This document shows, one piece after another, positions 21,124 through 33,566 of a stretch of 64,000 nt of DNA (position 1 is its first letter; every line of letters starts with the position of its first letter). Source of the DNA: Vitrella brassicaformis CCMP3155. Its lineage: Eukaryota > Protista > Chromerida. The DNA lies in contig CDMY01000013.1 of the NCBI GenBank assembly GCA_001179505.1, positions 124,001 to 188,000 of the forward strand, written 5' to 3'. The notes below the pieces were generated by a model, which did not search any database, was not told where the DNA came from, and saw nothing but the letters and a program-made list of their open reading frames with translations. Both the position numbers and the translations under genes were made by a program.

Positions 21124-23157
21124 ATGCCCCCGAAGCGCGCAATGGGGGCCAATTTCTCTCCTCTCTTCCCTTCGCCGGGAAGGATGGTGTGCTCGTGCCT
21201 TGCCTTCCTGTGTCGGGGTGCACAGAGGACAACGCAGGTCATGGAGGTGAAACAACCGGGCAACACCCTGAGGGGCGAAACCATGGAGCTCGATGCCCCG
21301 GGTGACACAACAGCTGAGGCGGCGCCGATGAGTGCTGTGGTGCCCGTTGCAAAGCCCTTGCTCAGGAGCTACACCACGACATCAATGACAAGTTCGCCCT
21401 TGCGCCTCGTGCCGCCGGCCCCACGGCGTGGACGGCGGATCTATCCTGTGTGTGTTTGCAATGGCTGCAGTGCATCACGAGATGGCCGTCCACCAGCAGA
21501 TGTCGGACGGTGCCGGAAAGTTGTTCAGAAGCCTCAGCCGCAAAGGTGACAGACACGGCCGGCAGAGACACAAGAGACACAAGACAGCGCTCTGTGTGTG
21601 TGCGCGCGTGCGTCCGTCTCAGGTAGCACGGCGACGGGCGAGGCGGTGAAGAAGCTGTCATGCTTTGCGTTCGATCCGCTGACCTTGAGGCAGATTGAGG
21701 TCAGTCACCGCTGTCTGCACAGAATACCATACGCACCGAGACTCTCCTTCTCCCTTTTGCCTTCCTGCCTGCCTGATTGCAGTTGGAGATGGCGCCGGCA
21801 GTGAGGAAGAAGTGGATGGTCTTCTCTGTCAAAATTATCAAGTATGTAAGTAACGACTATAAGTAACTAACGACAATAAAGACCAATTCGCGGCAGACAA
21901 GTCACGGTGGTTGCCTGCAGGGTCGTCTTGAGCACGGACCAATACAGTCTCTATCTCATGGAGTGAGTGAGTGAGTGAGTGAGGGAGACATGCATGGCAC
22001 GGCATTGTGTGAGGGAGATGCGCTGCGCATGTCTGTCTGCCTGTGTGCACACATGCTACAGGAAGCCCACTGGATGGGTCTCAGGCTCAAGACCGACAAG
22101 GAGAAAGACAACCGGGACTTCGTCTTCCATAACATCGCCACAAAAGACAAGTAGGCATCCATACCGGGAGACACATTTTATTTGATGACGTACACCCATG
22201 ACCGCCTGCCTTTCTTGGAAGACAGCAGTGGTGCACAGAACCCCAATGTCGCCATCTGCTCAACCCTGAAAAGCGAAGTCTATGGCTGCACGACCCTGAC
22301 GGCCTCAGCGGCAGACTGGCTCGCCAATAATGAGCTCACTGAGGACGACCTGCCCAGCAAAGTCAAAGCTGTCAAGAGGAAGGCAGAGGAGCAGAGAAAC
22401 GAGGTCAATGTGTCCATTGCAGGTATGTAGGGCTGCAAGTGCGACGCATTCATTCATTGTGCGTATGGGTGCTGTGCTGTGCTGTGCTGTGCATGTGTGT
22501 GTCACATCTGTGCAGCTACCGATGAGGTGCAGTACTATGCGGACAGCACCAGCAGCCGCACATCCAGCACCGCCGGCCTGCCGCACCAGCCGACCCACAC
22601 CCGCCCTAGCAGCAACAGCAGGAGACAGCTGGTTGGTATGCACACGCAGACCACAGACGACCTCGGCAGCGCAATCGCCACACAGGCAACTGCTGGGCTG
22701 CTGGGCTGCTGGATGGATGGATGCCCTCTCTCTCTCTCTCCTTCGCTCCCCTTTTATCCGCCCCTCTGCAGATACGCAGGAGTCTCTCTCGCACGTCAAA
22801 CGGGGAAGCCGACGAGGGGGCACAGAGCGATGAGCCACCGTGCAACTTGAGCATCGATAGGGAGAGGGCAGAGACACCGGCGGCCCTCAAGTCGTCATTG
22901 AAGCAGCTGGAGAGGGGCTTGATTAAGAGGCCTTTTCTGCCGTGGGTGGATGACCCGCCCGAGTTTCCCAGGATGGCCGAATCGTCAGGCTTCAAACGGG
23001 TCTTCAACACCTCTGACACAAGTAAGGGTGTGGTGCGTGCGTGTTTGCTCATGTAGGTAGGAGATGTCTGGCCCCCAACATTTGTGTGTGTGGGTGGATG
23101 TATGTATGTGGTTATGCAGGCGAGGTGAAGAAGCAGGCGCAGTCTGCCCCCGCCTGA
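21124..23157 (+). CDS. Hypothetical protein, multi-exon; 5' end uncertain
   Basis: Consecutive exons keep frame: STATGEAVKKLSCFAFDPLTLRQIE-LEMAPAVRKKWMVFSVKIIK-VVLSTDQYSLYLME-LKTDKEKDNRDFVFHNIATKD-SGAQNPNVAICSTLKSEVYG...KQLERGLIKRPFLPWVDDPPEFP...EVKKQAQSAPA*. Family not recognised. Confidence 0.55.
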
Positions 23158-23554
23158 CGGAGAGGCAGCACCAACGCCGCAAAACAACAGCACTGAAAGA
23201 CAGACAGACAGACAGACCTACTTGGCTGGACTGGACGTGTGTATGGGTGTGCGCCGCTCTGCACTGGTGCGTAGCAATCAGAATGTACAGCGTGCAGTAG
23301 ACGGGTTTTAAAGGGGATGCAGCGTCGGGCATGTATGGCCTGCAGGTAGATCGACGGAGAGGCAGGCAACCGTGGAAGGTACATACCATTTGCTTTGCTG
23401 CGTAGAACAGAGTAGCCAGACTGCGTGTGTTGTGTGAGAGATACAATGTGGGGTGATCACATTTATTCACGTCTGTCTGTGTCCGATCGATCAAGTTAAC
23501 CAAGCCAGCCAGGGTCTACTTCATTCATCGCTCATCCAGCCGGCATGCACACAG

Positions 23555-26500
23555 TCAGTCGGCCATCGGCAGAACCCCATTGCTCTTGAGCTGCTGCGAT
23601 GCTTGCTGCCTGTTGCGGGCAGTCACCTGTGCGCCCCACCGACAGTGAACCTGACGCACACACCAACACCAAACAGGTCCAAGATAGATGGGTATTGATT
23701 GGGTGGATTTGCCCACCTGGTCAGTGGCCCGCACAGCGCTCCGCCATGCACCAGTGGCCGTCTGGAAGCCCCGCGGCTCAGTAGCATCGCCGGCGAAGAA
23801 GAGGCGGCCGTCGAAGGACGCCTCGGGCTCTGCCAGGGCACGCACGTCGGCAAAGCTGCTGCCTTCACGCAGATAGGGGTAGCTGCCTGCAGGCACCACC
23901 CACCATAACAACACACACACCGCATAGCATACGTGGAAGGCATGTGTGTGTCGCCAGGCGTATGTGTGTGTGTGTGTTGGCCTTTGTACCCTGTGCGAAT
24001 GGGTCTTGTTTCCATCTGGTGATGTGGTACCCCACCAGCCAGTGTCTACGCATCCGCTCGACGGCCGCCCACTCCTCCCGCCCCCTGGCGTCCTCGTTCC
24101 TCTCCCACTCGCGCCACGTCGCCCACTTGTTGTCCTCCGCCTCGCCCGGCAGCTCCCGCATCCCCGGCCAGTCGATGTCGCCGATATCTGCGGCCGCCCC
24201 CAAGACATCGTCCTCCATCTGCGCTGCCGCATTGCTGTTGGCCGTGGCGACGGCGGCTGCATCGGGGGTCTTGCTGCGGTTCTTGTTGCGTGTCTTCTTC
24301 TTGCGTTTTTCGATCTCTGCTCGCTGTCTGTCTGGGTCGAGGATGGCCGGGATGGGTGGGGCGGGGAGGGAGAGGAGGGCGTGTATGCGGGGCTTGAACA
24401 TCTTATAAAGGCACGTGAGGATGTCGGTCAGCACCTGCTCGTCGGGCTGGGTCGGGAGGGTCTCGGTCGAGTAGGGCGGGTACAGGTGCGCAACCAACAC
24501 GCCGTGCTTGCCTGCACACACAACACAATACAATACAACATATGACGGACGGCATCTGTGTGTGGGGGTCTGTCTGTCGGTCTGAATGATGAGAGTAGGT
24601 GAGGTGCCTCCAAACGAACCGTATGCGTGCATGTTTGTGAACTGGAATCGTGGGTCGGTGGTGTTGATCTGGGAGGTGGTCGACGGCCAGAAGATGTGGT
24701 GCGCCCCGCCGCCCTTGTCACACGCGAAACGCAAAACAACCTTCTCGTGACAGCCCATACCAAGATGACCAATCGCCCTTTTAGAACAAACAAACGAAAC
24801 ACACACACACACACAGTGTGTATCCACCCAGACAGACACAGCTACGACACTGACCTCTGTTTGTCCTGCGAGAGTGGTGGTTGGAAGTCGACGGCAGCCC
24901 CCTGGCTGCCTTGCAGCACCCCGACGGGAACGGTGCACACCACACCCCGGCTGCGATACTCAAAGCCCTCGCGCGTCGTCACCTCACAGTGCACGCCACC
25001 ACTCGCCGCACCGGACGTCCGCAACGTCACACGACTCACAGTCTGCATGGGCACATCACATACACACACACAGAGAGATGTGCCCATGTAATTTGCATGT
25101 CGTGCCGTGCCTTGGCGTGTTTGTGGGTGGCTGCTTACCCGGTTGCAGTGGATGTATGGTTTGACGGTGTCGAATCGCTGCTCGATGAATGGTGTGAGTC
25201 CACTGACGGCCAGGCGGCAGGGCATGTCGTCGGTCAAGAGGCCGCCCTTGATGCGCTGGCGGCTGCTCGTGATCTTGTCCAGGTCACGCATCCGCCGATC
25301 CAAGTTCTGACGACGCCTGCAGTGCAGAGGGGCCAGAAACATAGCGACACGGCTGACTCCATTAACGTTCCCCCTGTCCAGTCCCCGCATCTCAAGGTTC
25401 CTCACCTCTCGACAGCGTCTCGGAGTCCGGCTGCATAAGGGTCGTCAGCGCTGCGTGGTGCGAGTGGCTGCTGGGGCAGGTAGTCGTCATCGATGGCGCG
25501 GTACCGCTCGTGGGACTCGAGCATCAGATCTCCCAGGCCAGGGTCGAACCACGACGCATGCTGAGGGAGGGACCATGGATGGATGGCAGAGACGTACACA
25601 GAGACGTACACATCACATATATTATGGGCGAATGTGTGTGTGTGTGGAGGGACTGGACTGACCTCTGTGGCGAGGGACTGCTGGTCGAGCGTGGCGCAGG
25701 TGCCCCACCACCGCATCCTGATCTTGTCCAACACAGCTGAACCAACAGCACAGACAGATGTCACTGTGGCTGTGTCCCCATTGCCTGTCACCTTGTCTGT
25801 CTCTCGTGTCAGTCACCTTTCTGTATGTCAGTGAGGCCATCGATCCCTAACCGCTCCAACACCACCATCAACGCATCCTCGTACGCACCAGACAGCGGCT
25901 GACACAACACAACACAACCACCATGCAAATCAAGTGGACCGACCACTCTATCCATCCATCCATCCAGGTCTCTCTCTCTCCCCATCGCCCATTGCCCCAC
26001 TCACGATGCTGGCAGCGCCGGTCTCGCGCATCCTCTGCTTGTACATGTGTAATGGCGAGTCGATGTGCCGCCCCTCCACCAGCACCAGCTTGCCCAGGCC
26101 GTCGTGCTCACGCCGCTCCCACACAGGGGGGTCCTCGCGGCATCTCGACAGGTCGGTGGTGGACGTGGGCAGCTGATGAAGGGGGGGATGGGTGATATGT
26201 GAGTTGGCCGATCAGTGGCTCGCGTGTGCGTGTGCGTGTGTGTGGGTGGTTACCATGTCGTCTCTGTGCAGGTCTTCAGCCCACTCGTGCAGCTCGGCGG
26301 CGACTTTCTGCAAGCGAATAGGGAACACACAGTGAGACTCCCATATGCGGGTGGGTGCGTGGCCTGCGCGTGTATCCCGCACCTCTGCAATGATGCTCAT
26401 TTTGACGTTTGTTGAGAAGGGCAGAGCGACGTTGTACTTGGTGTCGTAGTAGCGACAGTAGTCCGTCGGCTCGTTGTAGCCATTACCTACAACACACACA

Positions 26501-29500
26501 CAGACACACAGACACACAGACACAGAAAGAGAGAGAGAGAGAGAGAGACAACGACCGCAAGTGCTGCTTTTGCCACCGCGGTATATATCGTTTTCCATCC
26601 ATGGTGGTGTCTGCCCTTACTTACCGGCGATGAAGCCGAACTGCATTCGATGCTCGAGGGCCTCACTGCAAGCAACGAGCCGGAACAGGCCCCATGGTGG
26701 TTCATTCTCCTCTCTCTCTGCGTGTCTGCGCGTCTTACGTGTAAAGTGGGTTGTCTCTGTTAGCCTCGTAGATGTAGTCGGCGCCGACCTCGACTGTTCG
26801 CTCCTCGTCATCGGCAGCGCCGCCCTTCTTGCCGCCGCCCTCGAGCCTCACATGGCTGATGCGACCACCCATCCTGCAATACGCACAGACAGACAGACAT
26901 GTGTGACATCACCATGGCCGCGTGTCTCAGTGTGTTGGCCTACCTGTCGCGTGCTTCGAGGATGATGACTTTGAATCCCTTCTTGACCAGCCTCTTGGCG
27001 CACAGCAGCCCCGCAATACCCGCACCGATCACAATCACGTCAAACTGCACACGTCGCGTGACATCACCACACGCACACGCACACACACACCTGCTGGCTA
27101 TTCATTCCTCCCTCCCTCCGTCCGTCCCAGCTTTCTTACTGACCGCGTTGGTGTCCCTGTCCATGTAACTGTCCCACACCTCGCCGCCCAGCAGCCCCTC
27201 AGACATCGGGAGGGAGGGCTTGGGCACGTGGGGGCCGCCGCCCTTGAGGTACTTGATGAACCGGCGCGCACCTTGGTGGCCCAGCCAGCGGATCGCCTCC
27301 TCGTCCCACCTACAATCGACGACCATAGACAACGAGTGCTGTCTCTGTGTGTGTGTGTGTGTGTGTGTGTGCTCCGAACCGCATGGCGGCCTTGTCGAAG
27401 GAAGGGTATTCGCCCAGCAGCCGCTCTTTGCCGTTGAGGTGGAAGCGGGGGACGTACATGTTGCTGGTTGGGTCGAAGGTGATCCTCTGGGCATAGTGGT
27501 AGGCGGCAGAGGGACCCACCACTGACTCCCACGACCGACGCAGCAACTCATCTGCACAACACACACATATACACAACACACACAATTCCGTTGCCAGCGT
27601 TGTCCCGTTTTAATCACTCCTACCCTCTCTCGCTCACCATCGTGTGGGATGGCGTCCGCCCTGTTGCCCTTTTCGCGGTGCATGCCCATGGCCTCCTCAA
27701 CCGCCTTCTCCCGCCCGTACCAGAAGCCATACTTCCTGGCGCTGAGCCCCGAGACCTTGTAGTTGGTCCGCACCTCCCAGCACTTGCCCTCGTACTTGAC
27801 GGTGAACTTGCCCCCGTATTCAACCGACGGCAGCACCGGCAGCGACCCGCCCAGCTCGTCCCAGCGGTCGGCCGGCGGGTCCTCCGTGTAGCACTTGCCG
27901 ATCTCCTGCGGGCAGAAGTTGCCGTAGTGCGCGGCTGTCAGGGACCTGGCCACTCGGGTGGGCACGCTCTGGGAGGAACGCTCACGCGGAGGGAAGGGGA
28001 GCGGGGGCGACGGGAGGTCGATGTGGAGCTGTTTGGATCGCACCCGGGGCCTCTCCTCGCCCACGGCGGCCATCTCCACATCAGCAACACCCTTCTTGCC
28101 TGCTTTTGCACGAGCCGGCAAGGCCTCGCTGAGGGGCATGTTGTCGTCTGGGGAGCTGGGGGCGCGGAAGAGGTCGGTGAAAATGGGGTTGATGCCCGCG
28201 TCGGCGAATGGCGTGTCTCCGCCTCCGAGCCCGGGCGGCGCCGCAGCCTTCTTGGCCTTGCTCTTGGTCTTCTTGGGTTCGCTCTTGCCCTCTGCGGCCT
28301 TCTTCCTCGAGGCAGGTGCCCTCTTGGCAGCGCCCCCGGCCTTCTCGTGGCACCAGGTGGGGACGGGGATGTCAAGGGGGTTGATGGCTCCGGTGCGGAT
28401 GGCGTTGAGTCGGTCCTCGACGACCTGCCGGACGTTCTTGAGGTGGTCGATAGCGAACTGCCTGGCGCGGAGGTAGCCGTACTTGCGGGCGGCGAAGCCC
28501 TTCATGCGGCTGAGCTGTCTGCTGGTATCGGGGTCGATCGGGGGAGGGTACTCACAGTCAACTGAATCATCGATGGATGGATGACACAGTCAGTCAAATA
28601 TGAGGACACGTAGACGCGCATCTGTATGGTAAGGTATGTGTGATGTATGTCAGTCAGTTTGCTCACTGAATGCCTTCTTCCAGTAGACGCTGTCGATGAC
28701 GGCCACCCATGAGGTGTCCCGCACGTTCCACCGGATGCCCACCACCTTGAGGGCGCCACTCTGCGCCACCAGATCCCACGCGTCCGGGTGAATGTCCATG
28801 TACTTGATCACTAGCGTCGGGTCGTTCGCACGAGCAGCTACACACACCACACCCACCCAACAGGAAAAAATCAACAGAGGTAAGTTAGTTAGTGAGATGT
28901 CAATCCATGTGCTGGGCGTGTGTTGGCTGGGCTGGGTACCAAGATCTTTGGATTTGCTCTGCGACGCCTCGATGGCCAGCTCACGCGCCTTGAGGAAGCC
29001 GAAGCGTCTGGCATGGAACTCTCTGGCGTGTCGTGGCCGGCCGGCGTATCGGTAGGCGCACCACACCATCCGCCATGGATGCCACTTCACCTTGGGCAGC
29101 TCGGGCAGCTTCTCGGCCGCCTCGTCCCATGCGGACGGGTGAAGGTCGATCTCGGGCACTGACGACCACACCAACAGATGAGCAGATAATAGGAGTACAT
29201 TTCTTTGGTACATCCATGCGATCGGTGCGGTGCGCACCCACCAGCGTCCGAGAAGTCTTCAACCGGTGAGGTGGGGCTGGCCAGGTCTTCACTGCCCTCA
29301 TTGGACACCGTCCTGCCAAACCCACCAGCGCCCTTCTTGCCAGCGGCACTCTTCCTCTTGGCCGATGGTGGGGCGGACGACAGGCCGCCCCTGCTGCCGC
29401 CCCTCTTGCTGCCGTTGCCGTTCCTCCTCTGGCGTGCGAGGGCGGGGTCGCTGCCGCTCTCGGATGGAATCTCCTCCATGTGCTCATCCTCATCTGACCA

Positions 29501-30300
29501 GCCGTACCGCTGGCCGGTGATGGGCTTGAGGCGCATACGCTTGGCCGGCAGCGAACCCATACCCTCCTCTATACCTGATCAATGAATGCACGACGGAATG
29601 ATGGTCATAACATAATGCCATCCAATGTGGCCCAAATGCACTCCCCTCCATGACCTTGGTGGCCGACTGACTGACCTTCATTGTCGTCTTGGTCTTCGCT
29701 CTCCTCGTCCTCCATTCTCCCGCCGACAGTCGCCAAGTCCTCCAGCACCCGACCGCCACGACCCGAGCCGTTTCGAGCCCTCTTCTTGCTCGACGCCCCC
29801 GCAGCCGAGGCAGCCCGGCCGCCTCGACCCCGCCCTCCCCTCCCACCCCTCTTGGGAGCCGGAGGTCGAGGGGCCATGCCTCTGGCAACCGCGCCTGCAT
29901 CCCAGAAGGGCATAGGGCGCGACGGCAGGCCTCCCACCATCGGATGGGAGGGCGGACGAGGCAGCCTTGGGTCGGGCAGGAAGCGGGGATGCGTCACAAG
30001 GAGAGGTGGGAAGGGGAACGGCGCTCGGAGAGAGGGCGCACGAAGGGGCTGCTGGCCGGTGACCGGCGGCCATCGCATTTGGAAGAGAGGTCCCGGCAGC
30101 GGATGTTGGGTGGGCACAGTTGCACCCCGCCCTGCGGCCTGGCCAGCCTGTTGCTGCTGCTGTGATGACTCGGGCGGTGAGCCAGGGAGGCGGAATTGAA
30201 GCAGCTGTGGCAGGGGCGGTAGGCTGGGAGCTCGCGGGCGTGTAGGACTGGTGCTGCTTGCCGCAGCCGCAAAGGTAGGACTGGACTGCGATGGCTGCAT
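23555..30300 (-). CDS. Four AP2-like domains fused to a C-terminal flavin-containing amine oxidase (LSD1/polyamine-oxidase-like), ~20 exons
   Basis: Exons 30300-29676, ~29575-29245, 29158-28940, 28837-28667, 28561-27638, 27551-27380, 27309-27144 and 27044-26944 splice in one frame from a P/Q/RGG-rich N-terminus through four AP2-like units into [38 protein letters not shown]. Later exons give [54 protein letters not shown] and [27 protein letters not shown]. One mid-oxidase junction (~26170-26010) is ambiguous. Confidence 0.85.
23725..27044 (-). other. Flavin amine oxidase domain (Amino_oxidase, PF01593-like) of the fusion protein
   Basis: GxGxxG plus EARDRxGGR FAD-binding motifs, the GxGxxxKVxLxF motif, WxxDPFxxGSY and LFFAG[E/D]AT...TxxGA. 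Confidence 0.9.
27270..27551 (-). other. AP2-like domain 4 (plant ERF / HNH-AP2-like C-terminal signature)
   Basis: [38 protein letters not shown]|[10 protein letters not shown] across the 27380/27309 splice matches xLGxFxTxEEAAxAYDxAA. Confidence 0.7.
27680..27890 (-). other. AP2-like domain 3 (divergent ApiAP2 type)
   Basis: [65 protein letters not shown]. Confidence 0.55.
28437..28837 (-). other. AP2-like domain 2 (ApiAP2 type, with insertion)
   Basis: MDIHPDAWD...[26 protein letters not shown]-(insert)[21 protein letters not shown]. Confidence 0.7.
28940..29158 (-). other. AP2-like domain 1 (ApiAP2 type)
   Basis: [45 protein letters not shown] matches the ApiAP2 pattern (V-x-[WF]...W-x-A...F-x-x-x-[KR]-[YF]-G-x-x-x-A-R-x-x-A-I). 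Confidence 0.8.
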
Positions 30301-30689: not shown

Positions 30690-33089
30690 ATGGTTGGCGA
30701 TGAATCAGCTGCTATGAGGAGCCATTCATCAAGCGGCGGCGAGCATATTCATCGGCCAGCACGCCTTCCGCCACTCTGTCGGCGCCGCCCGCCTTCTTCA
30801 GCATGTCCATGTGGCTACACACGCGTCGAGGATACGAGCGGGTGGACGTGTTCTGCATCATCCATCTTGCCCTTTGTTGGGAGCACCAGGCGCCAGCGCC
30901 TTTGCCCTCTGTCCCTTCTATTCGCCCTCCTGCCCTGGCTCTTCTTTTTCAGTGCTTCCAGCTTCACCCCGCCAACCCGTCTCTACTCACGGCACAATGT
31001 CAGGCCACACCATGCCCACGTCAACGGTCCACCTGATCGGCCTCACGCTGCGACATCTCCAACGCTCCCACCGGTGCGGCAGCGGCTGACGAGTCATGAC
31101 GTGTGCGACTATCTTTTCCTGGTGCCGGGGGGGCTAGAGGGCGTGGCAGCCGACTACATATCGTCACGGCTCGGTGTGCCTCGAGAGGCGATAGTGATCT
31201 TGCCGAGGGAAGATAGTGGGTGGGCTGGTGGCGGCAAGCTGGTGGTGTCGGTGAATGCGGCACAGGTGTCTATCGACAGGCTCAGGGCGCTCGGCCTCAC
31301 CCCGCTGTACGCCTACGTCCTGGCGACCAGCGGTGTCCCGATCCGCGACAGGCGGCACGCCAGCCACCAGATTCAGCGGGTGCTGCATGAAGCCGTGCCT
31401 GCGATGGAGAAGGCCCTCGTCACATGGGCAGAGTGGCAGGGAGCCGTGCAGGGCGACCAGACCGTGTGGGAACGGATACGCGACCGGTCACTCAAGATGA
31501 GGGGGTGCTGCGTGCGCAGCGGGAGGCACAAGTATGACGCCATGGCCGTCATCCGTATGATGAACCGGGCTTTGGCCAATGAGGGGTGGAGCGTGGAATT
31601 GCACGACGCCGAGTGCACCCTCGTGGGCTTCCTCGACGGCAGCCGACTCACGATCGCCATCCCCTTTGCCCCGATGTCCTCCTCACCGTCCTCTTTGCGG
31701 CGGGAGGAAGTGCCTTATCGGGTGGGTATGTGTGCTGTGCATGTCAGAAGCAAGGCAACCATCCTCAGCCCGTCAGTTGTTTCTTCGTTGATGCGTGTGT
31801 GCGGATGGATCCTCAGGCCGTGTCGATGCATTTCCAGTTCCACGATCTGCATCGCTCGCTAGCCGTGCTCATGGCCCATCTGGCGCTCGACGGCGTGCGG
31901 TCGGGTGCTGTCGTGATGGACCCCGTGAGCAGCTCGGGGACCCTGGCCATCGAAGCCGCTGCCATGGCGCCCAACGTGACAGTGCTGTGCTCCCATCCAA
32001 GGCCCATGGGCAGTGTGCTCACCAGGGCAAACTCTCTCAAGGCCAAACGAATGGGACACTTCAGGTCAGCCTGCCTGCCCGATGCGGTCGGTCGGTACCT
32101 TCTGTCTGATAGCGATACTCTTCCTTCCTGATGTGTGTGTCTTTATTCTCCATCCATCCGTTGATGCCTGCAGTGAGGGGAGCCGTGTGGAGGTGGTGGG
32201 TGCGTTCCCTCCCGTCCCCCTCCCGCCCCACCTGCTGGACGCCATCGTCATGTGCCTCGCCCCATCCGAAGAGAGCGAGGAGTTCCGGCACGCTGGAGAC
32301 GCCATCGGCTTCCTCGCCGACTTCTGCAGCAGGGAGGCCATCAGGCTACTCCGGCCCGGTGGGCGGCTCGTGTGCGCGCTTCGAGACTGCCGCAACCCCT
32401 ACCCCGTGCTGTCAGCCCTCAACGTCACGGCGGCCGACCGCATCACAGTCACAGAGGGGCCGGCAATCGTGCGTCCAAGGCCCACCACACTTCCTTCTTG
32501 TCGTCAGCAGCCATCTGTTGGTGTATCGCAGCGGCCCTTTCCTTCTTCAGTGCGCCGGCAGCCTGGCTGGGGCGGCGGGGGTGTAGTGGGCAGTGGAGGA
32601 CTGCTCAGAGACACGGGGCTATCCCGGCGGCCGACAGTGGTGGCTGCATCGCCAGACAACGATGGCCTCGAGCACCACTCGGTGCTCGACTCGCAGATGC
32701 AGCAGCACGGAGAGGGAGGGGGAGAGGGGGGCGACATGTGGGCGTCGGCGACGGTGTATCGCGTCTTGTGTCGCAACGACCGGTATCGGCTGTTCGTGCT
32801 GACCAAGCGGGGTGGCCATGATGAAGCAGACAGGACCGAGGAGGAGGATGGCTCGGCCAGCCGGCGCACGGAGCTGTCGAGGCTGCTGGAATCGATCATC
32901 GACGGGCGATGGGCCGACGCCCCCGAGCTTGAAGACAATGACCATGGACATGATGATGACGAGGATGCTTCCGATGCAGCTGAGGATGGACGTGTGTCTG
33001 CGCTGCCCATGCGTGCCCTGCATCGTTGGCCGGTGCGCAGGAGGCTGAGGACGGCATTTGACCAGGGATGGCAGGCGGTGAGACAATGA
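30690..33089 (+). CDS. THUMP domain plus UPF0020-type (THUMPD2/3, Trm14/RlmL-like) RNA methyltransferase-like protein with degenerate motifs; start codon uncertain
   Basis: DYLFLVPGGLEGVAADYISSRLG (N-terminal domain), LKMRGCCVRSGRHKY...GWSVELHDAECTLVGFLDGSRLTIAIPF (THUMP), LHRSLAVLMAHLA...VVMDPVSSSGTLAIEAA (SAM motif I region), RLLRPGGRLV. Stop at 33089. Confidence 0.7.
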
Positions 33090-33266
33090 GGGAGTCAGAG
33101 AGGGAGGGATGGAGGGGGGAGGGGCTGTCTGCGAATGAAGTGCATACGTGAAGAGAGAGACACGAACCAGAGGAGCGAGGGAGGGAGGGAAAGGTACGCC
33201 GGACGGACATTTTTGGGGATTCACTCGGACATCAGATCTGTGACTGAAGGGGGGGGGGGGGGGGGG

Positions 33267-33566
33267 NNNNNNNNNNNNNNNNNNNNNNNNNNNNNNNNNN
33301 NNNNNNNNNNNNNNNNNNNNNNNNNNNNNNNNNNNNNNNNNNNNNNNNNNNNNNNNNNNNNNNNNNNNNNNNNNNNNNNNNNNNNNNNNNNNNNNNNNNN
33401 NNNNNNNNNNNNNNNNNNNNNNNNNNNNNNNNNNNNNNNNNNNNNNNNNNNNNNNNNNNNNNNNNNNNNNNNNNNNNNNNNNNNNNNNNNNNNNNNNNNN
33501 NNNNNNNNNNNNNNNNNNNNNNNNNNNNNNNNNNNNNNNNNNNNNNNNNNNNNNNNNNNNNNNNNN
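33267..33566. other. Assembly gap (300 N) preceded by poly-G
   Basis: About 18 G, then an N run. Confidence 0.99.

What the first reader, a model, noticed from the sequence alone, without database searches (positions are those of the whole stretch)
23555..30300. AP2 transcription-factor domains fused to an LSD1/PAO-type flavin amine oxidase: candidate self-targeting histone demethylase
Seen: one continuous spliced frame links four AP2-like DNA-binding domains to a complete FAD amine-oxidase domain. The junction exons (27309-27144, 27044-26944) are phase-compatible with no stop or intergenic space. There are several basic NLS-like patches ([30 protein letters not shown]). Known: ApiAP2s are the main sequence-specific TFs of apicomplexans and chromerids and normally recruit chromatin enzymes in trans. 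LSD1/KDM1 demethylases are flavin amine oxidases that usually use a SWIRM domain and partner TFs. The Lys of the GxGxxxKV motif, equivalent to LSD1 K661, is retained ([12 protein letters not shown]). No SWIRM is visible. Inference: AP2 domains replace SWIRM and partners, giving a sequence-specific chromatin eraser, or a DNA-tethered polyamine/amine oxidase. I know of no described AP2 plus amine-oxidase architecture, but could not search.
Basis: partly seen in the sequence, partly recalled or inferred. Interest (0 to 1): 0.88.

Follow-up and report, generated by a model that had tools for sequence, protein, structure and literature searches.

The report
AP2 domains fused to amine oxidase
In the alga Vitrella brassicaformis, a free-living relative of malaria parasites, one expressed gene joins three (perhaps four) AP2-type DNA-binding domains to an intact flavin amine oxidase of the histone-demethylase/polyamine-oxidase group; I found no paper describing this combination, and it could be a chromatin enzyme that finds its own DNA targets, but its substrate is unproven.

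Summary
Spliced RNA contigs from three studies join the exon 27309-27144 directly to the FAD-binding exon 27044-26944 (GT..AG, in frame). One 6.7-kb RNA contig matches, to the base, a 22-exon, 1611-codon open frame on the minus strand (30300 to 23555). The public Vitrella brassicaformis protein for this gene (1525 aa, uncharacterised) is also fused.

The oxidase domain is solid: Pfam Amino_oxidase E 1e-39, with the GxGxxG, GGR, catalytic Lys and FAGDAT motifs intact. The AP2 claim is weaker.
- Domains 1 and 2 give significant but sub-threshold Pfam AP2 hits, and their best PDB matches are apicomplexan AP2 domains.
- Domain 3 is clearly similar to domains 1 and 2.
- Domain 4 rests only on language-model features.

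The "LSD1-type" label is not established. There is no SWIRM domain. Only 7 of 49 LSD-signature columns match, and the tree is unresolved. LSD1/2 lead polyamine oxidases only narrowly in sequence and fold searches, and SWIRM-less control oxidases show the same ordering.

Best reading: a nuclear, DNA-tethered amine oxidase, probably a lysine demethylase. A polyamine oxidase is the main rival. No homologue with this architecture and no paper describing it was found. Unchecked first-stage notes flag about seven similar loci in the same genome.

The parts
23555..30300 (-). Whole coding region: 22 exons, 21 GT..AG introns of 66-142 nt, 1611 codons. ATG at 30300, stop at 23555-23557.
   Evidence: Introns come from RNA contig joints, checked for GT..AG. 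The frame is open from end to end. The public protein P0001 is the same gene with two small differences.
29676..30300 (-). Exon 1: low-complexity Pro/Gly/Arg-rich N-terminus with an RGG run (29815-29853).
   Evidence: Translation. Linked to exon 2 by the inferred intron 29575-29675, which P0001 also uses. Not covered by the laid reads.
29525..29548 (-). Basic patch PAKRMRLK (NLS-like). Other patches: 29333-29359 (KRKSAAGKK), 28248-28307 (Lys-rich linker), 24270-24308 ([13 protein letters not shown]).
   Evidence: Spliced translation and coordinate mapping. NLS function is inferred from composition only.
28953..29099 (-). AP2-like domain 1 (aa 340-388), ApiAP2 type.
   Evidence: Pfam PF00847 E 3.1e-6, 27.8 bits, gathering score 33.3. 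The best PDB matches are Plasmodium PF14_0633 AP2 (3igm, E 0.01) and Toxoplasma AP2VIIb-2 (E 0.013).
28431..28757 (-). AP2-like domain 2 (aa 420-493). Split by intron 28562-28666 and carries a ~25-aa internal insert.
   Evidence: Pfam PF00847 E 1e-3, 19.8 bits, covering profile positions 2-52 of 54. Similar to domain 1 at z 7.3.
27675..27842 (-). AP2-like domain 3 (aa 690-745).
   Evidence: No Pfam hit. Similar to domains 1 and 2 at z 5.7 and 6.8, with 0 of 2000 shuffles reaching the score. Atlas features: 68 of 100 named hits are AP2 clusters, score 0.84.
27264..27489 (-). Putative AP2-like domain 4 (aa 779-830). Split by intron 27310-27379. Unverified.
   Evidence: No Pfam hit and no similarity to domains 1-3. 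Atlas features: 64 of 100 named hits are AP2 clusters, score 0.89, a lead only. By eye it resembles the canonical AP2 pattern; this is inference.
27045..27143 (-). The junction intron (99 nt, GTCAGT...TGCAG) between the last AP2-region exon (27309-27144) and the first oxidase exon (27044-26944).
   Evidence: Joint 27044|27144 in X1, X6 and X7. Sequence read directly. The oxidase exon has no Met of its own.
23648..27044 (-). FAD amine-oxidase domain (aa 871-1581) in 15 exons, with three lineage-specific inserts.
   Evidence: Pfam Amino_oxidase E 1.1e-39 and NAD_binding_8 E 3.8e-12. In the AF2 model the core has pLDDT 75-95 and the inserts are below 50. VIA Z is 32 to LSD1, 31 to LSD2 and 30 to maize PAO.
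27009..27026 (-). GxGxxG dinucleotide-binding motif (GAGIAG), followed by ILEARDRMGGR.
   Evidence: Invariant columns G12, G14, G17, E35, G41, G42 and R43 in alignment A3.
24726..24767 (-). [14 protein letters not shown]: the conserved active-site Lys (aa 1309), aligned with the Lys of LSD2 'GAGIIEKIALQF'.
   Evidence: HMMER alignment to LSD2. The Lys column is invariant in all 15 aligned oxidases.
24036..24392 (-). Charged ~110-aa insert inside the oxidase (aa 1390-1508), containing [13 protein letters not shown] and an acidic/Trp-rich stretch.
   Evidence: Absent from all other aligned oxidases. pLDDT is below 50. It has no relatives in 1.84 billion representative proteins.
23780..24020 (-). 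C-terminal FAD-contact motifs [15 protein letters not shown] and LFFAGDAT.
   Evidence: Aligned to LSD2 residues 706-772. W651, G659 and G691 are conserved columns.

Best explanation
This is a single nuclear protein of about 1600 aa in Vitrella brassicaformis.

**Shown.** One mRNA and one open frame encode, in order:
- a disordered N-terminus rich in RGG and basic patches;
- three ApiAP2-type DNA-binding domains, plus a possible fourth;
- with no SWIRM domain in between, a complete FAD-dependent amine oxidase of the LSD/polyamine-oxidase group, whose cofactor-binding motifs and active-site Lys are intact.

**Inferred.** The AP2 domains bind specific DNA motifs and so hold the oxidase on chromatin at those sites. 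There the flavin most probably oxidises the methyl-amine of mono- or di-methylated lysines on histone tails (LSD-type chemistry, releasing formaldehyde and H2O2). This would erase a methyl mark locally without a separate recruiting transcription factor. The three lineage-specific inserts in the oxidase, and the AP2 array itself, may stand in for the SWIRM and Tower surfaces that canonical LSD enzymes use to engage nucleosomes and partners.
For: **The fusion is real.**
- The joint 27044|27144 is seen in three RNA runs, and single spliced contigs span all the AP2 and oxidase exons.
- The frame stays open for 1611 codons.
- The oxidase's first exon has no Met and lies only 99 nt from the previous exon.
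- The public model is also fused.

**The oxidase looks intact.**
- Pfam Amino_oxidase E 1e-39.
- The invariant FAD and Lys columns are kept.
- The core of the AF2 model is confident.

**AP2 nature.**
- Pfam AP2 E 3e-6 and 1e-3 for domains 1 and 2.
- The top PDB hits are apicomplexan AP2 domains.
- Domains 1-3 are mutually similar at z 5.7-7.3.
- Atlas features point to AP2 clusters.

**Leaning towards LSD.**
- PDB phmmer: LSD2 1.7e-26 and LSD1 7e-20, against SMOX 5e-16.
- VIA: Z 32.2 at 28% identity to LSD1, against Z 30.3 at 22% to maize PAO.
- The ten best Swiss-Prot fold matches are all LSD/LDL proteins.

**Context.** Several basic NLS-like patches are present. S. pombe Lsd1/2 carry a DNA-binding HMG box, so a DNA-binding domain on an LSD enzyme has precedent (PMC7226997).
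Against: - There is no SWIRM domain, which every characterised KDM1 enzyme has.
- Only 7 of 49 columns that distinguish the SWIRM-LSD sequences match, no better than the SWIRM-less oxidases P0007 and P0008.
- The ML tree puts the domain outside the LSD clade (100/99 support) in a polytomy. Forcing it to be sister to LSD costs 11.5 lnL, with AU p 0.085.
- SWIRM-less 509-aa control oxidases also score LSD1/2 first in the PDB, so that ordering is not diagnostic.
- Atlas features place the domain nearest to spermine oxidase and PAOX clusters.
- The AP2 Pfam scores are below the gathering threshold, and the AP2-region structure prediction failed (pLDDT 36).
- Nothing here tests DNA binding, localisation or activity.
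Confidence: 0.5

Rival explanations
1. DNA-tethered or nuclear polyamine (or other small-amine) oxidase. The oxidase acts on spermine, spermidine, their acetyl derivatives or another free amine, and the AP2 domains only place or regulate it. For example, it could locally remove chromatin-bound polyamines or produce H2O2 as a signal.
For: - No SWIRM domain.
- The LSD signature is not kept.
- The tree does not place the domain in the LSD clade.
- Atlas features are nearest to spermine oxidase and PAOX clusters, score 0.98.
- Fold scores to maize PAO, PAOX and Fms1 lie within 2-3 Z units of LSD1.
Against: - Known PAO/SMOX enzymes are stand-alone proteins of ~450-560 aa without DNA-binding domains (lengths).
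- In alignment A2 the query has Tyr-Glu where three of five SWIRM-less oxidases have the His-Gly of 'IHG'.
- Structure-based identity is lower to PAOs (22-25%) than to LSD1/2 (28-29%).
- Making H2O2 and aldehydes right on DNA looks costly. This last point is inference.
Confidence: 0.25
2. An ordinary ApiAP2 transcription factor whose oxidase domain no longer catalyses. The domain would serve as a scaffold or reader module, as the non-catalytic roles reported for LSD proteins suggest.
For: - The oxidase is highly divergent: its end branch is 1.46, and no close homologue appears in two word-index searches.
- It carries about 300 aa of low-confidence inserts.
- In S. pombe the catalytic mutants of Lsd1/2 have mild phenotypes compared with domain deletions (PMC7226997).
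Against: All family-invariant FAD-binding and active-site columns are retained, including the Lys, GxGxxG, GGR, TRW..GSY and FAGDAT motifs. Relaxed selection on catalysis would be expected to erode them.
Confidence: 0.12
3. Two products from one locus. Alternative transcription starts, intron retention (the junction intron holds an in-frame stop at 27102-27104) or proteolysis would give a separate AP2 factor and a separate oxidase, starting for example at Met 850 or 863 in exon 27309-27144. On this reading the fused mRNA is a minor form.
For: - Assembled contigs cannot exclude minor isoforms.
- In the low-depth runs X1 and X2, coverage is present over the oxidase exons but nearly absent over 27140-28500.
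- In-frame Mets exist just upstream of the junction.
Against: - The spliced junction is the form assembled in three runs from three studies, at the same depth as the rest of the contig.
- No pile-up of molecule starts or ends was reported (table 6).
- The oxidase exon has no start codon of its own.
Confidence: 0.08
4. Assembly or annotation artefact that joins two neighbouring genes.
For: None found. It was considered only because the genome is a draft with gaps, such as the N run at 33268-33566.
Against: Independent RNA assemblies from 2013 and 2015 reproduce every exon junction on this DNA with 0-1 mismatches. The gap between the two parts is a canonical 99-nt intron.
Confidence: 0.02

Closest known systems
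KDM1 family histone demethylases (human LSD1/KDM1A, LSD2/KDM1B, plant LDL1-3/FLD)
   Same: Same FAD amine-oxidase fold: VIA Z 31-32 with 28-29% identity over ~375 aligned residues. They are the best PDB sequence matches. The same FAD motifs and active-site Lys are present. Extra sequence sits roughly where LSD1 carries its Tower.
   Different: No SWIRM domain. Only 7 of 49 LSD-signature columns are kept. The domain is not placed inside the SWIRM-LSD clade. It has AP2 domains in place of LSD2's zinc fingers. It has three lineage-specific inserts.
Schizosaccharomyces pombe Lsd1/Lsd2 (SWIRM + amine oxidase + C-terminal HMG box)
   Same: An LSD-group oxidase carrying its own DNA-binding domain in the same polypeptide (PMC7226997).
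   Different: The HMG box recognises DNA or nucleosomes without strong sequence specificity and lies C-terminal to the oxidase, and SWIRM is present. Here the DNA-binding part is an N-terminal array of AP2 domains, a sequence-specific class in apicomplexans by established knowledge, and SWIRM is missing.
ApiAP2 transcription factors of apicomplexans and chromerids
   Same: Domains 1-3 are of the ApiAP2 type. The best PDB matches are Plasmodium PF14_0633 and Toxoplasma AP2VIIb-2. Multi-AP2 proteins with long disordered linkers are typical of the family. Chromerids have a large, duplicated apiAP2 repertoire (PMC4501334).
   Different: In the literature I could search, described ApiAP2 proteins are not reported with an amine-oxidase domain. 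Here the Pfam scores fall below the gathering score.
Polyamine oxidases (maize PAO, yeast Fms1, mammalian PAOX/SMOX)
   Same: Same fold at nearly the same score: Z 29.7-30.3. Like them it has no SWIRM. Atlas features are nearest to the SMOX and PAOX clusters.
   Different: Those are stand-alone enzymes of ~450-560 aa with no DNA-binding domains. Identity is lower, at 22-25%, and PDB sequence scores are weaker, at 37-61 bits against 74-96 for LSD1/2.

Membership tests
KDM1/LSD histone demethylases | FAD amine-oxidase domain with intact dinucleotide-binding motif and active-site Lys | tested here: met
   Pfam PF01593 E 1.1e-39. GxGxxG, E, GGR and Lys are invariant columns in A3. The Lys aligns with the LSD2 Lys. 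The feature is shared with all flavin amine oxidases, so it is necessary but not specific.
KDM1/LSD histone demethylases | SWIRM domain directly N-terminal to the oxidase | tested here: not met
   No PF04433 hit anywhere in P0001 at E up to 1 or in residues 745-790 at E up to 10. Only ~40 residues lie between putative AP2-4 and the GxGxxG motif. The real LSD hits P0003, P0004 and P0010 all carry PF04433.
KDM1/LSD histone demethylases | Phylogenetic placement within the SWIRM-LSD clade | tested here: inconclusive
   In a 15-sequence ML tree the LSD clade has 100/99 support and excludes the query, which sits in a polytomy. The AU test does not reject query+LSD (p 0.085, lnL difference 11.5). Sampling was poor because the word-index searches returned few relatives.
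KDM1/LSD histone demethylases | Residues shared by LSD sequences and absent from other amine oxidases | tested here: not met
   7 of 49 signature columns match. The SWIRM-less oxidases P0007 and P0008 match 6 each. The signature was derived from only three LSD sequences.
KDM1/LSD histone demethylases | Demethylation of H3K4me1/2 (or H3K9me1/2) | not testable with these tools
   Needs an enzyme assay.
LSD1 (KDM1A) subfamily | Tower coiled-coil inserted in the oxidase, binding CoREST | tested here: inconclusive
   About 55 extra residues lie at roughly the Tower position and a further ~60 just after it. They are predicted helical, but at pLDDT 30-50.
AP2 / ApiAP2 DNA-binding domain (PF00847) | Match to the Pfam AP2 model at or above the gathering score | tested here: not met
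   AP2-1 scores 27.8 bits (E 3.1e-6) and AP2-2 scores 19.8 bits (E 1e-3), against a cut-off of 33.3. AP2-3 and AP2-4 give no hit. The E-values for AP2-1 and AP2-2 are nevertheless significant for a one-protein scan.
AP2 / ApiAP2 DNA-binding domain (PF00847) | Nearest characterised relatives are AP2 domains | tested here: met
   The two best PDB matches for residues 200-780 are Plasmodium PF14_0633 AP2 (E 0.01) and Toxoplasma AP2VIIb-2 (E 0.013), and nothing else scores below E 0.3. Domains 1-3 are mutually similar at z 5.7-7.3. Atlas hits are AP2 clusters in 64-68 of 100 cases for domains 3 and 4.
AP2 / ApiAP2 DNA-binding domain (PF00847) | Three-stranded sheet packed on a helix | tested here: inconclusive
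   Single-sequence AF2 of P0001:205-775 gave mean pLDDT 35.6. The strand-strand-helix pattern at domains 2-4 is therefore not reliable.
AP2 / ApiAP2 DNA-binding domain (PF00847) | Sequence-specific DNA binding | not testable with these tools
   Needs PBM, DAP-seq or EMSA.
Polyamine oxidase / spermine oxidase | Stand-alone oxidase of ~450-560 aa without chromatin or DNA-binding domains | tested here: not met
   The oxidase is the C-terminal 740 aa of a 1611-aa protein with AP2 domains.
Polyamine oxidase / spermine oxidase | Closer in sequence and fold to PAO/SMOX than to LSD | tested here: inconclusive
   PDB phmmer and fold searches put LSD1/2 slightly first, while Atlas features put SMOX/PAOX first. 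The controls show that the PDB ordering does not discriminate.

The most novel reading that the evidence does not exclude
Vitrella may carry a whole family of chromatin erasers that are hard-wired to their own AP2 DNA-binding arrays. The family would include this flavin oxidase, about seven further AP2-plus-amine-oxidase loci, and a JmjC/KDM4-plus-AP2 gene, all flagged elsewhere in this genome by unchecked first-stage notes. On this reading, the ApiAP2-chromatin enzyme partnership that apicomplexan parasites run in trans existed, or still exists, as single polypeptides in their free-living relatives. This gene would then be a SWIRM-less, sequence-targeted lysine demethylase, a natural counterpart of engineered DNA-binding-domain-LSD1 epigenome editors.
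Probability: 0.3. Interest if true: 0.8.

Novelty: new variant of a known kind. Interest (0 to 1): 0.6.

Why it matters
ApiAP2 proteins are the main sequence-specific regulators in malaria parasites and their relatives. How they bring chromatin enzymes to their targets is an active question. A natural single-chain AP2-oxidase in a free-living relative offers a simple system to ask three things:
- whether AP2 domains can aim an eraser directly;
- what an LSD-group oxidase needs in place of SWIRM and CoREST to work on chromatin;
- whether such fusions came before the trans-acting complexes of parasites.

If the enzyme proves to be a polyamine oxidase instead, a DNA-tethered polyamine oxidase would itself be without precedent. 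The protein sits in public databases only as an uncharacterised 'amine oxidase domain-containing protein'. Its AP2 domains fall below Pfam's cut-off, so domain-architecture catalogues would not list the combination.

Tried and rejected
1. **Searches for homologues with the same architecture.**
   - Two word-index searches with the oxidase region, one for candidates of 839-2669 aa and one for 397-1262 aa, and one profile search returned only generic oxidases and plant or animal SWIRM-LSDs. The candidate lists were saturated by FAD-motif words, so these blanks are weak evidence.
It found only that protein plus one spurious repeat protein.
   - A metagenome scan found nothing.
2. **AF2 of the AP2 region** without an alignment failed (pLDDT 36) and cannot be used either way.
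3. **Profile comparison of AP2-4** against AP2-1 to AP2-3 (hhalign probability 0.1) and Pfam at E up to 10 gave no support for the fourth domain.
4. **A hidden SWIRM.** I considered that the stretch '[20 protein letters not shown]' before the oxidase might be the tail of a SWIRM, by eye against the 'L..HG.INFG' pattern visible in P0003. I rejected this. Pfam SWIRM gives no hit, and the segment continues a strand-strand-helix unit that looks AP2-like.
5. **A transposon-borne gene or tandem family.** I rejected this for the locus. It has 21 spliced introns, ordinary neighbouring genes and no second copy in the window.
6. **The low-GC island at 33000-33500** is only an assembly gap.
7. **Fold searches** (Foldseek, VIA, AFDB Swiss-Prot) do not separate LSD from PAO.

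Full report
**What is in the sequence.**
The region is GC-rich (about 0.6) and full of short ORF fragments on the minus strand, separated by stretches rich in (CA)n/(TG)n. Stop-to-stop pieces on the minus strand gave Pfam hits to Amino_oxidase in three separate pieces (26943-27101, 24845-25444, 23558-24427) and to AP2 in 28653-29258. So both halves of the claim have a basis in the raw frames.

**Is it one transcript?**
Runs holding this DNA were found, and four of them were laid on 23540-29539.
- Two runs of unknown type (X6, X7) and two guessed RNA runs (X1, X2) carry contigs in which every intron is removed, so they are RNA assemblies.
- X6 record 11 (6686 nt, depth 100) and X7 record 12 (4063 nt) run on the minus strand across the whole stretch.
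- The critical joint 27044|27144 skips 99 nt with CT..AC ends, which is GT..AG on the minus strand. It is present in X1, X6 and X7.

Reading the DNA directly, exon 27309-27144 ends ...DRDTNA before GTCAGT. The intron ends ...GTGCAG, and exon 27044-26944 begins [12 protein letters not shown], in phase. That oxidase exon contains no Met, and the intron carries an in-frame stop, so the oxidase cannot start on its own there.

I inferred three introns that are absent from the shortened table: 27310-27379, 26487-26624 and 29575-29675. The first two are confirmed indirectly, because the contig positions of the flanking pieces leave exactly the summed length of my exons (1252+1 nt between 27638 and 25315, and likewise 171 nt and 158 nt elsewhere).

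With all 21 introns removed, the frame is open for 1611 codons from ATG 30300 to the stop at 23555-23557.

**Public record.**
An exhaustive phmmer search with one oxidase exon retrieved a 1525-aa protein, 100% identical, with the match at residues 1265-1437. It is from Vitrella brassicaformis CCMP3155, labelled 'unnamed protein product' / 'Amine oxidase domain-containing protein'. It lies on contig CDMY01000013.1 among ordinary genes: Laminin_G_3, KH and PhyH.

It is the same fused gene with two differences. It starts at Met121 of my model, and it reads intron 28838-28939 through as 34 residues, although RNA contigs in X1, X6 and X7 splice that intron out. The fusion was therefore already predicted by the annotators, but the precomputed Pfam list for this protein contains no AP2.

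**The oxidase.**
- On the public protein, Amino_oxidase scores E 1.1e-39 and NAD_binding_8 scores E 3.8e-12.
- In alignments with 8 and 14 other oxidases, the query keeps all the invariant columns: GxGxxG, the Glu and GGR of ILEARDRMGGR, the active-site Lys of HLGMGCHEK, the Trp of TRW, and the Gly of GSY and FAGDAT.
- It also carries three inserts absent from all the others: about 55 aa near the position of the LSD1 Tower, about 60 aa just after it, and a charged stretch of about 110 aa before TRW.
- An AF2 model built on the 15-row alignment has a confident core (pLDDT 75-95) and unreliable inserts.

**LSD or polyamine oxidase?**
Some results lean towards LSD.
- PDB phmmer ranks LSD2 (1.7e-26), LSD1 (7e-20), SMOX (5e-16), PAOX (2e-14) and Fms1 (3e-12) in that order.
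- Foldseek puts LSD1 and LSD2 at about 5e-23 and Fms1 at 7e-22.
- VIA gives Z 32.2 (28% identity) to LSD1, 31.3 (29%) to LSD2, 30.3 (22%) to maize PAO, 30.0 to PAOX and 29.7 to Fms1.
- The ten best Swiss-Prot models are all LSD/LDL proteins, with PAO5 at rank 11.

This lead is small, and the following checks weaken it.
- Two SWIRM-less 509-aa oxidases (P0005, P0008) show the same LSD-first ordering in the PDB, so the ordering is not evidence of demethylase function.
- The Atlas feature search puts spermine oxidase and PAOX clusters first.
- In a 15-sequence ML tree the three SWIRM-bearing LSDs form a 100/99 clade without the query, which sits unresolved on a long branch. Forcing it next to them is not rejected (AU p 0.085).
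- Of 49 columns that separate those LSDs from the other oxidases, the query matches 7, about the same as two SWIRM-less oxidases.
- No SWIRM is detectable.

I therefore place the domain in the LSD/PAO group of flavin amine oxidases and leave its substrate open.

**The AP2 units.**
- Unit 1 (aa 340-388) matches Pfam AP2 at E 3e-6, and unit 2 (aa 420-493, with an internal insert) at E 1e-3. Both are under the gathering score of 33.3 bits.
- For the whole N-terminal half, the only PDB matches better than E 0.3 are two apicomplexan AP2 domains, 3igm and Toxoplasma AP2VIIb-2.
- Units 1, 2 and 3 resemble each other far beyond shuffled controls (z 5.7-7.3, 0 of 2000 shuffles), mainly through the shared F/L-x-A-R-K/R-Y/F-G-F/Y...A-I/V-E helix region. 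Unit 3 is therefore the same kind of domain, although Pfam does not see it.
- Unit 4 (aa 779-830) is different. It has no similarity to units 1-3 and no Pfam hit at E up to 10. It has only a language-model lead, with 64 of 100 named hits in AP2 clusters at score 0.89, and a by-eye likeness to the canonical AP2 pattern.
- The single-sequence structure prediction of this half failed (pLDDT 36).

My count is three ApiAP2-type domains plus one unverified.

**Relatives and literature.**
No protein with this architecture was recovered. The word-index searches were swamped by FAD-motif words, so absence is not shown.

Full-text searches for ApiAP2 or AP2 domain together with amine oxidase, LSD1, demethylase, Vitrella or Chromera found nothing describing such a fusion. 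The chromerid genome paper does not mention amine oxidase or demethylase in its text or held supplements. It does report a heavily duplicated apiAP2 repertoire, including one cluster of 50 homologous genes in Vitrella (PMC4501334).

The nearest described precedent for a DNA-binding domain on an LSD-group oxidase is S. pombe Lsd1/2, which have SWIRM + oxidase + HMG box (PMC7226997).

Earlier first-stage notes of this scan list about seven other loci in the same genome read as AP2-like domains plus an amine oxidase. A followed-up note describes a KDM4-type JmjC demethylase fused to an AP2 array. I could not fetch or test those loci, and they are leads only. This same stretch was also noted once before from an overlapping window (s1-226948).

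**Mechanism and verdict.**
Shown: one mRNA, one frame, intact oxidase motifs, at least two or three AP2-type domains, several basic patches, and no SWIRM.

Inferred: nuclear location, sequence-specific DNA binding, and action of the flavin on chromatin.

The fusion logic and the slight LSD lean make a self-targeting lysine demethylase the single most likely reading. A DNA-tethered polyamine or small-amine oxidase is a serious rival, and a non-catalytic scaffold role a lesser one.

I rate this a new variant of a known kind. Both parts are known families, and DNA-binding domains on LSD enzymes have precedent. The AP2-plus-oxidase combination without SWIRM appears undescribed and would be missed by threshold-based domain catalogues.

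Noticed in passing
window 28838-28939 and 29940-30300: The public gene model (P0001) reads intron 28838-28939 through as 34 residues (GTQPSQ...VVCV), although RNA contigs in X1, X6 and X7 splice it out. It also starts at an internal Met (MVGGLPS...), leaving out 120 upstream in-frame codons that follow the first ATG at 30300.
   Followed up: yes
window ~21945-23540: The X6 RNA contig continues 1595 nt past the stop codon. The next annotated gene (383 aa) is convergent and begins ~400 nt downstream (L001 16784-18700, minus). Either the 3' UTR is very long, or the two convergent transcripts overlap and were assembled together.
   Followed up: partly
window 23940-24139, 25940-26339, 26740-27139: Word depth jumps about tenfold in all four runs at introns rich in (CA)n/(TG)n, with many loose ends. 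These are unrelated contigs sharing the simple repeat, not higher expression. Such CA/TG tracts sit in most introns of this gene.
   Followed up: partly
window 33268-33566: The apparent low-GC, high-skew island in the composition profile is an assembly gap (a run of N) preceded by a poly-G tract.
   Followed up: yes
other contigs of the same genome (scan notes s1-215900, s1-221679, s1-226993, s1-242753, s1-201728, s1-201773, s1-252819, s1-226915): First-stage notes flag about seven further AP2-like plus amine-oxidase loci. One is said to carry the AP2 repeats inside the oxidase at the Tower position. A followed-up note describes a JmjC/KDM4 plus AP2 array. If real, AP2-eraser fusions are a family trait of Vitrella.
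   Followed up: no
proteins P0005 and P0008 (fetched homologues): Stand-alone SWIRM-less oxidases of 509 aa score human LSD2/LSD1 above all polyamine oxidases in the PDB (E 5e-48 and 7e-31). 'Best hit is LSD' is therefore not a safe criterion for calling a histone demethylase.
   Followed up: partly
PDB entry 9g6k chain Lk (hit of window 28953-29099): The second-best PDB match of AP2-1 is the Toxoplasma 'AP2 domain transcription factor AP2VIIb-2'. The two-letter chain id (Lk) suggested to me that it was solved as part of a large assembly, possibly a ribosome. I did not check this.
   Followed up: no
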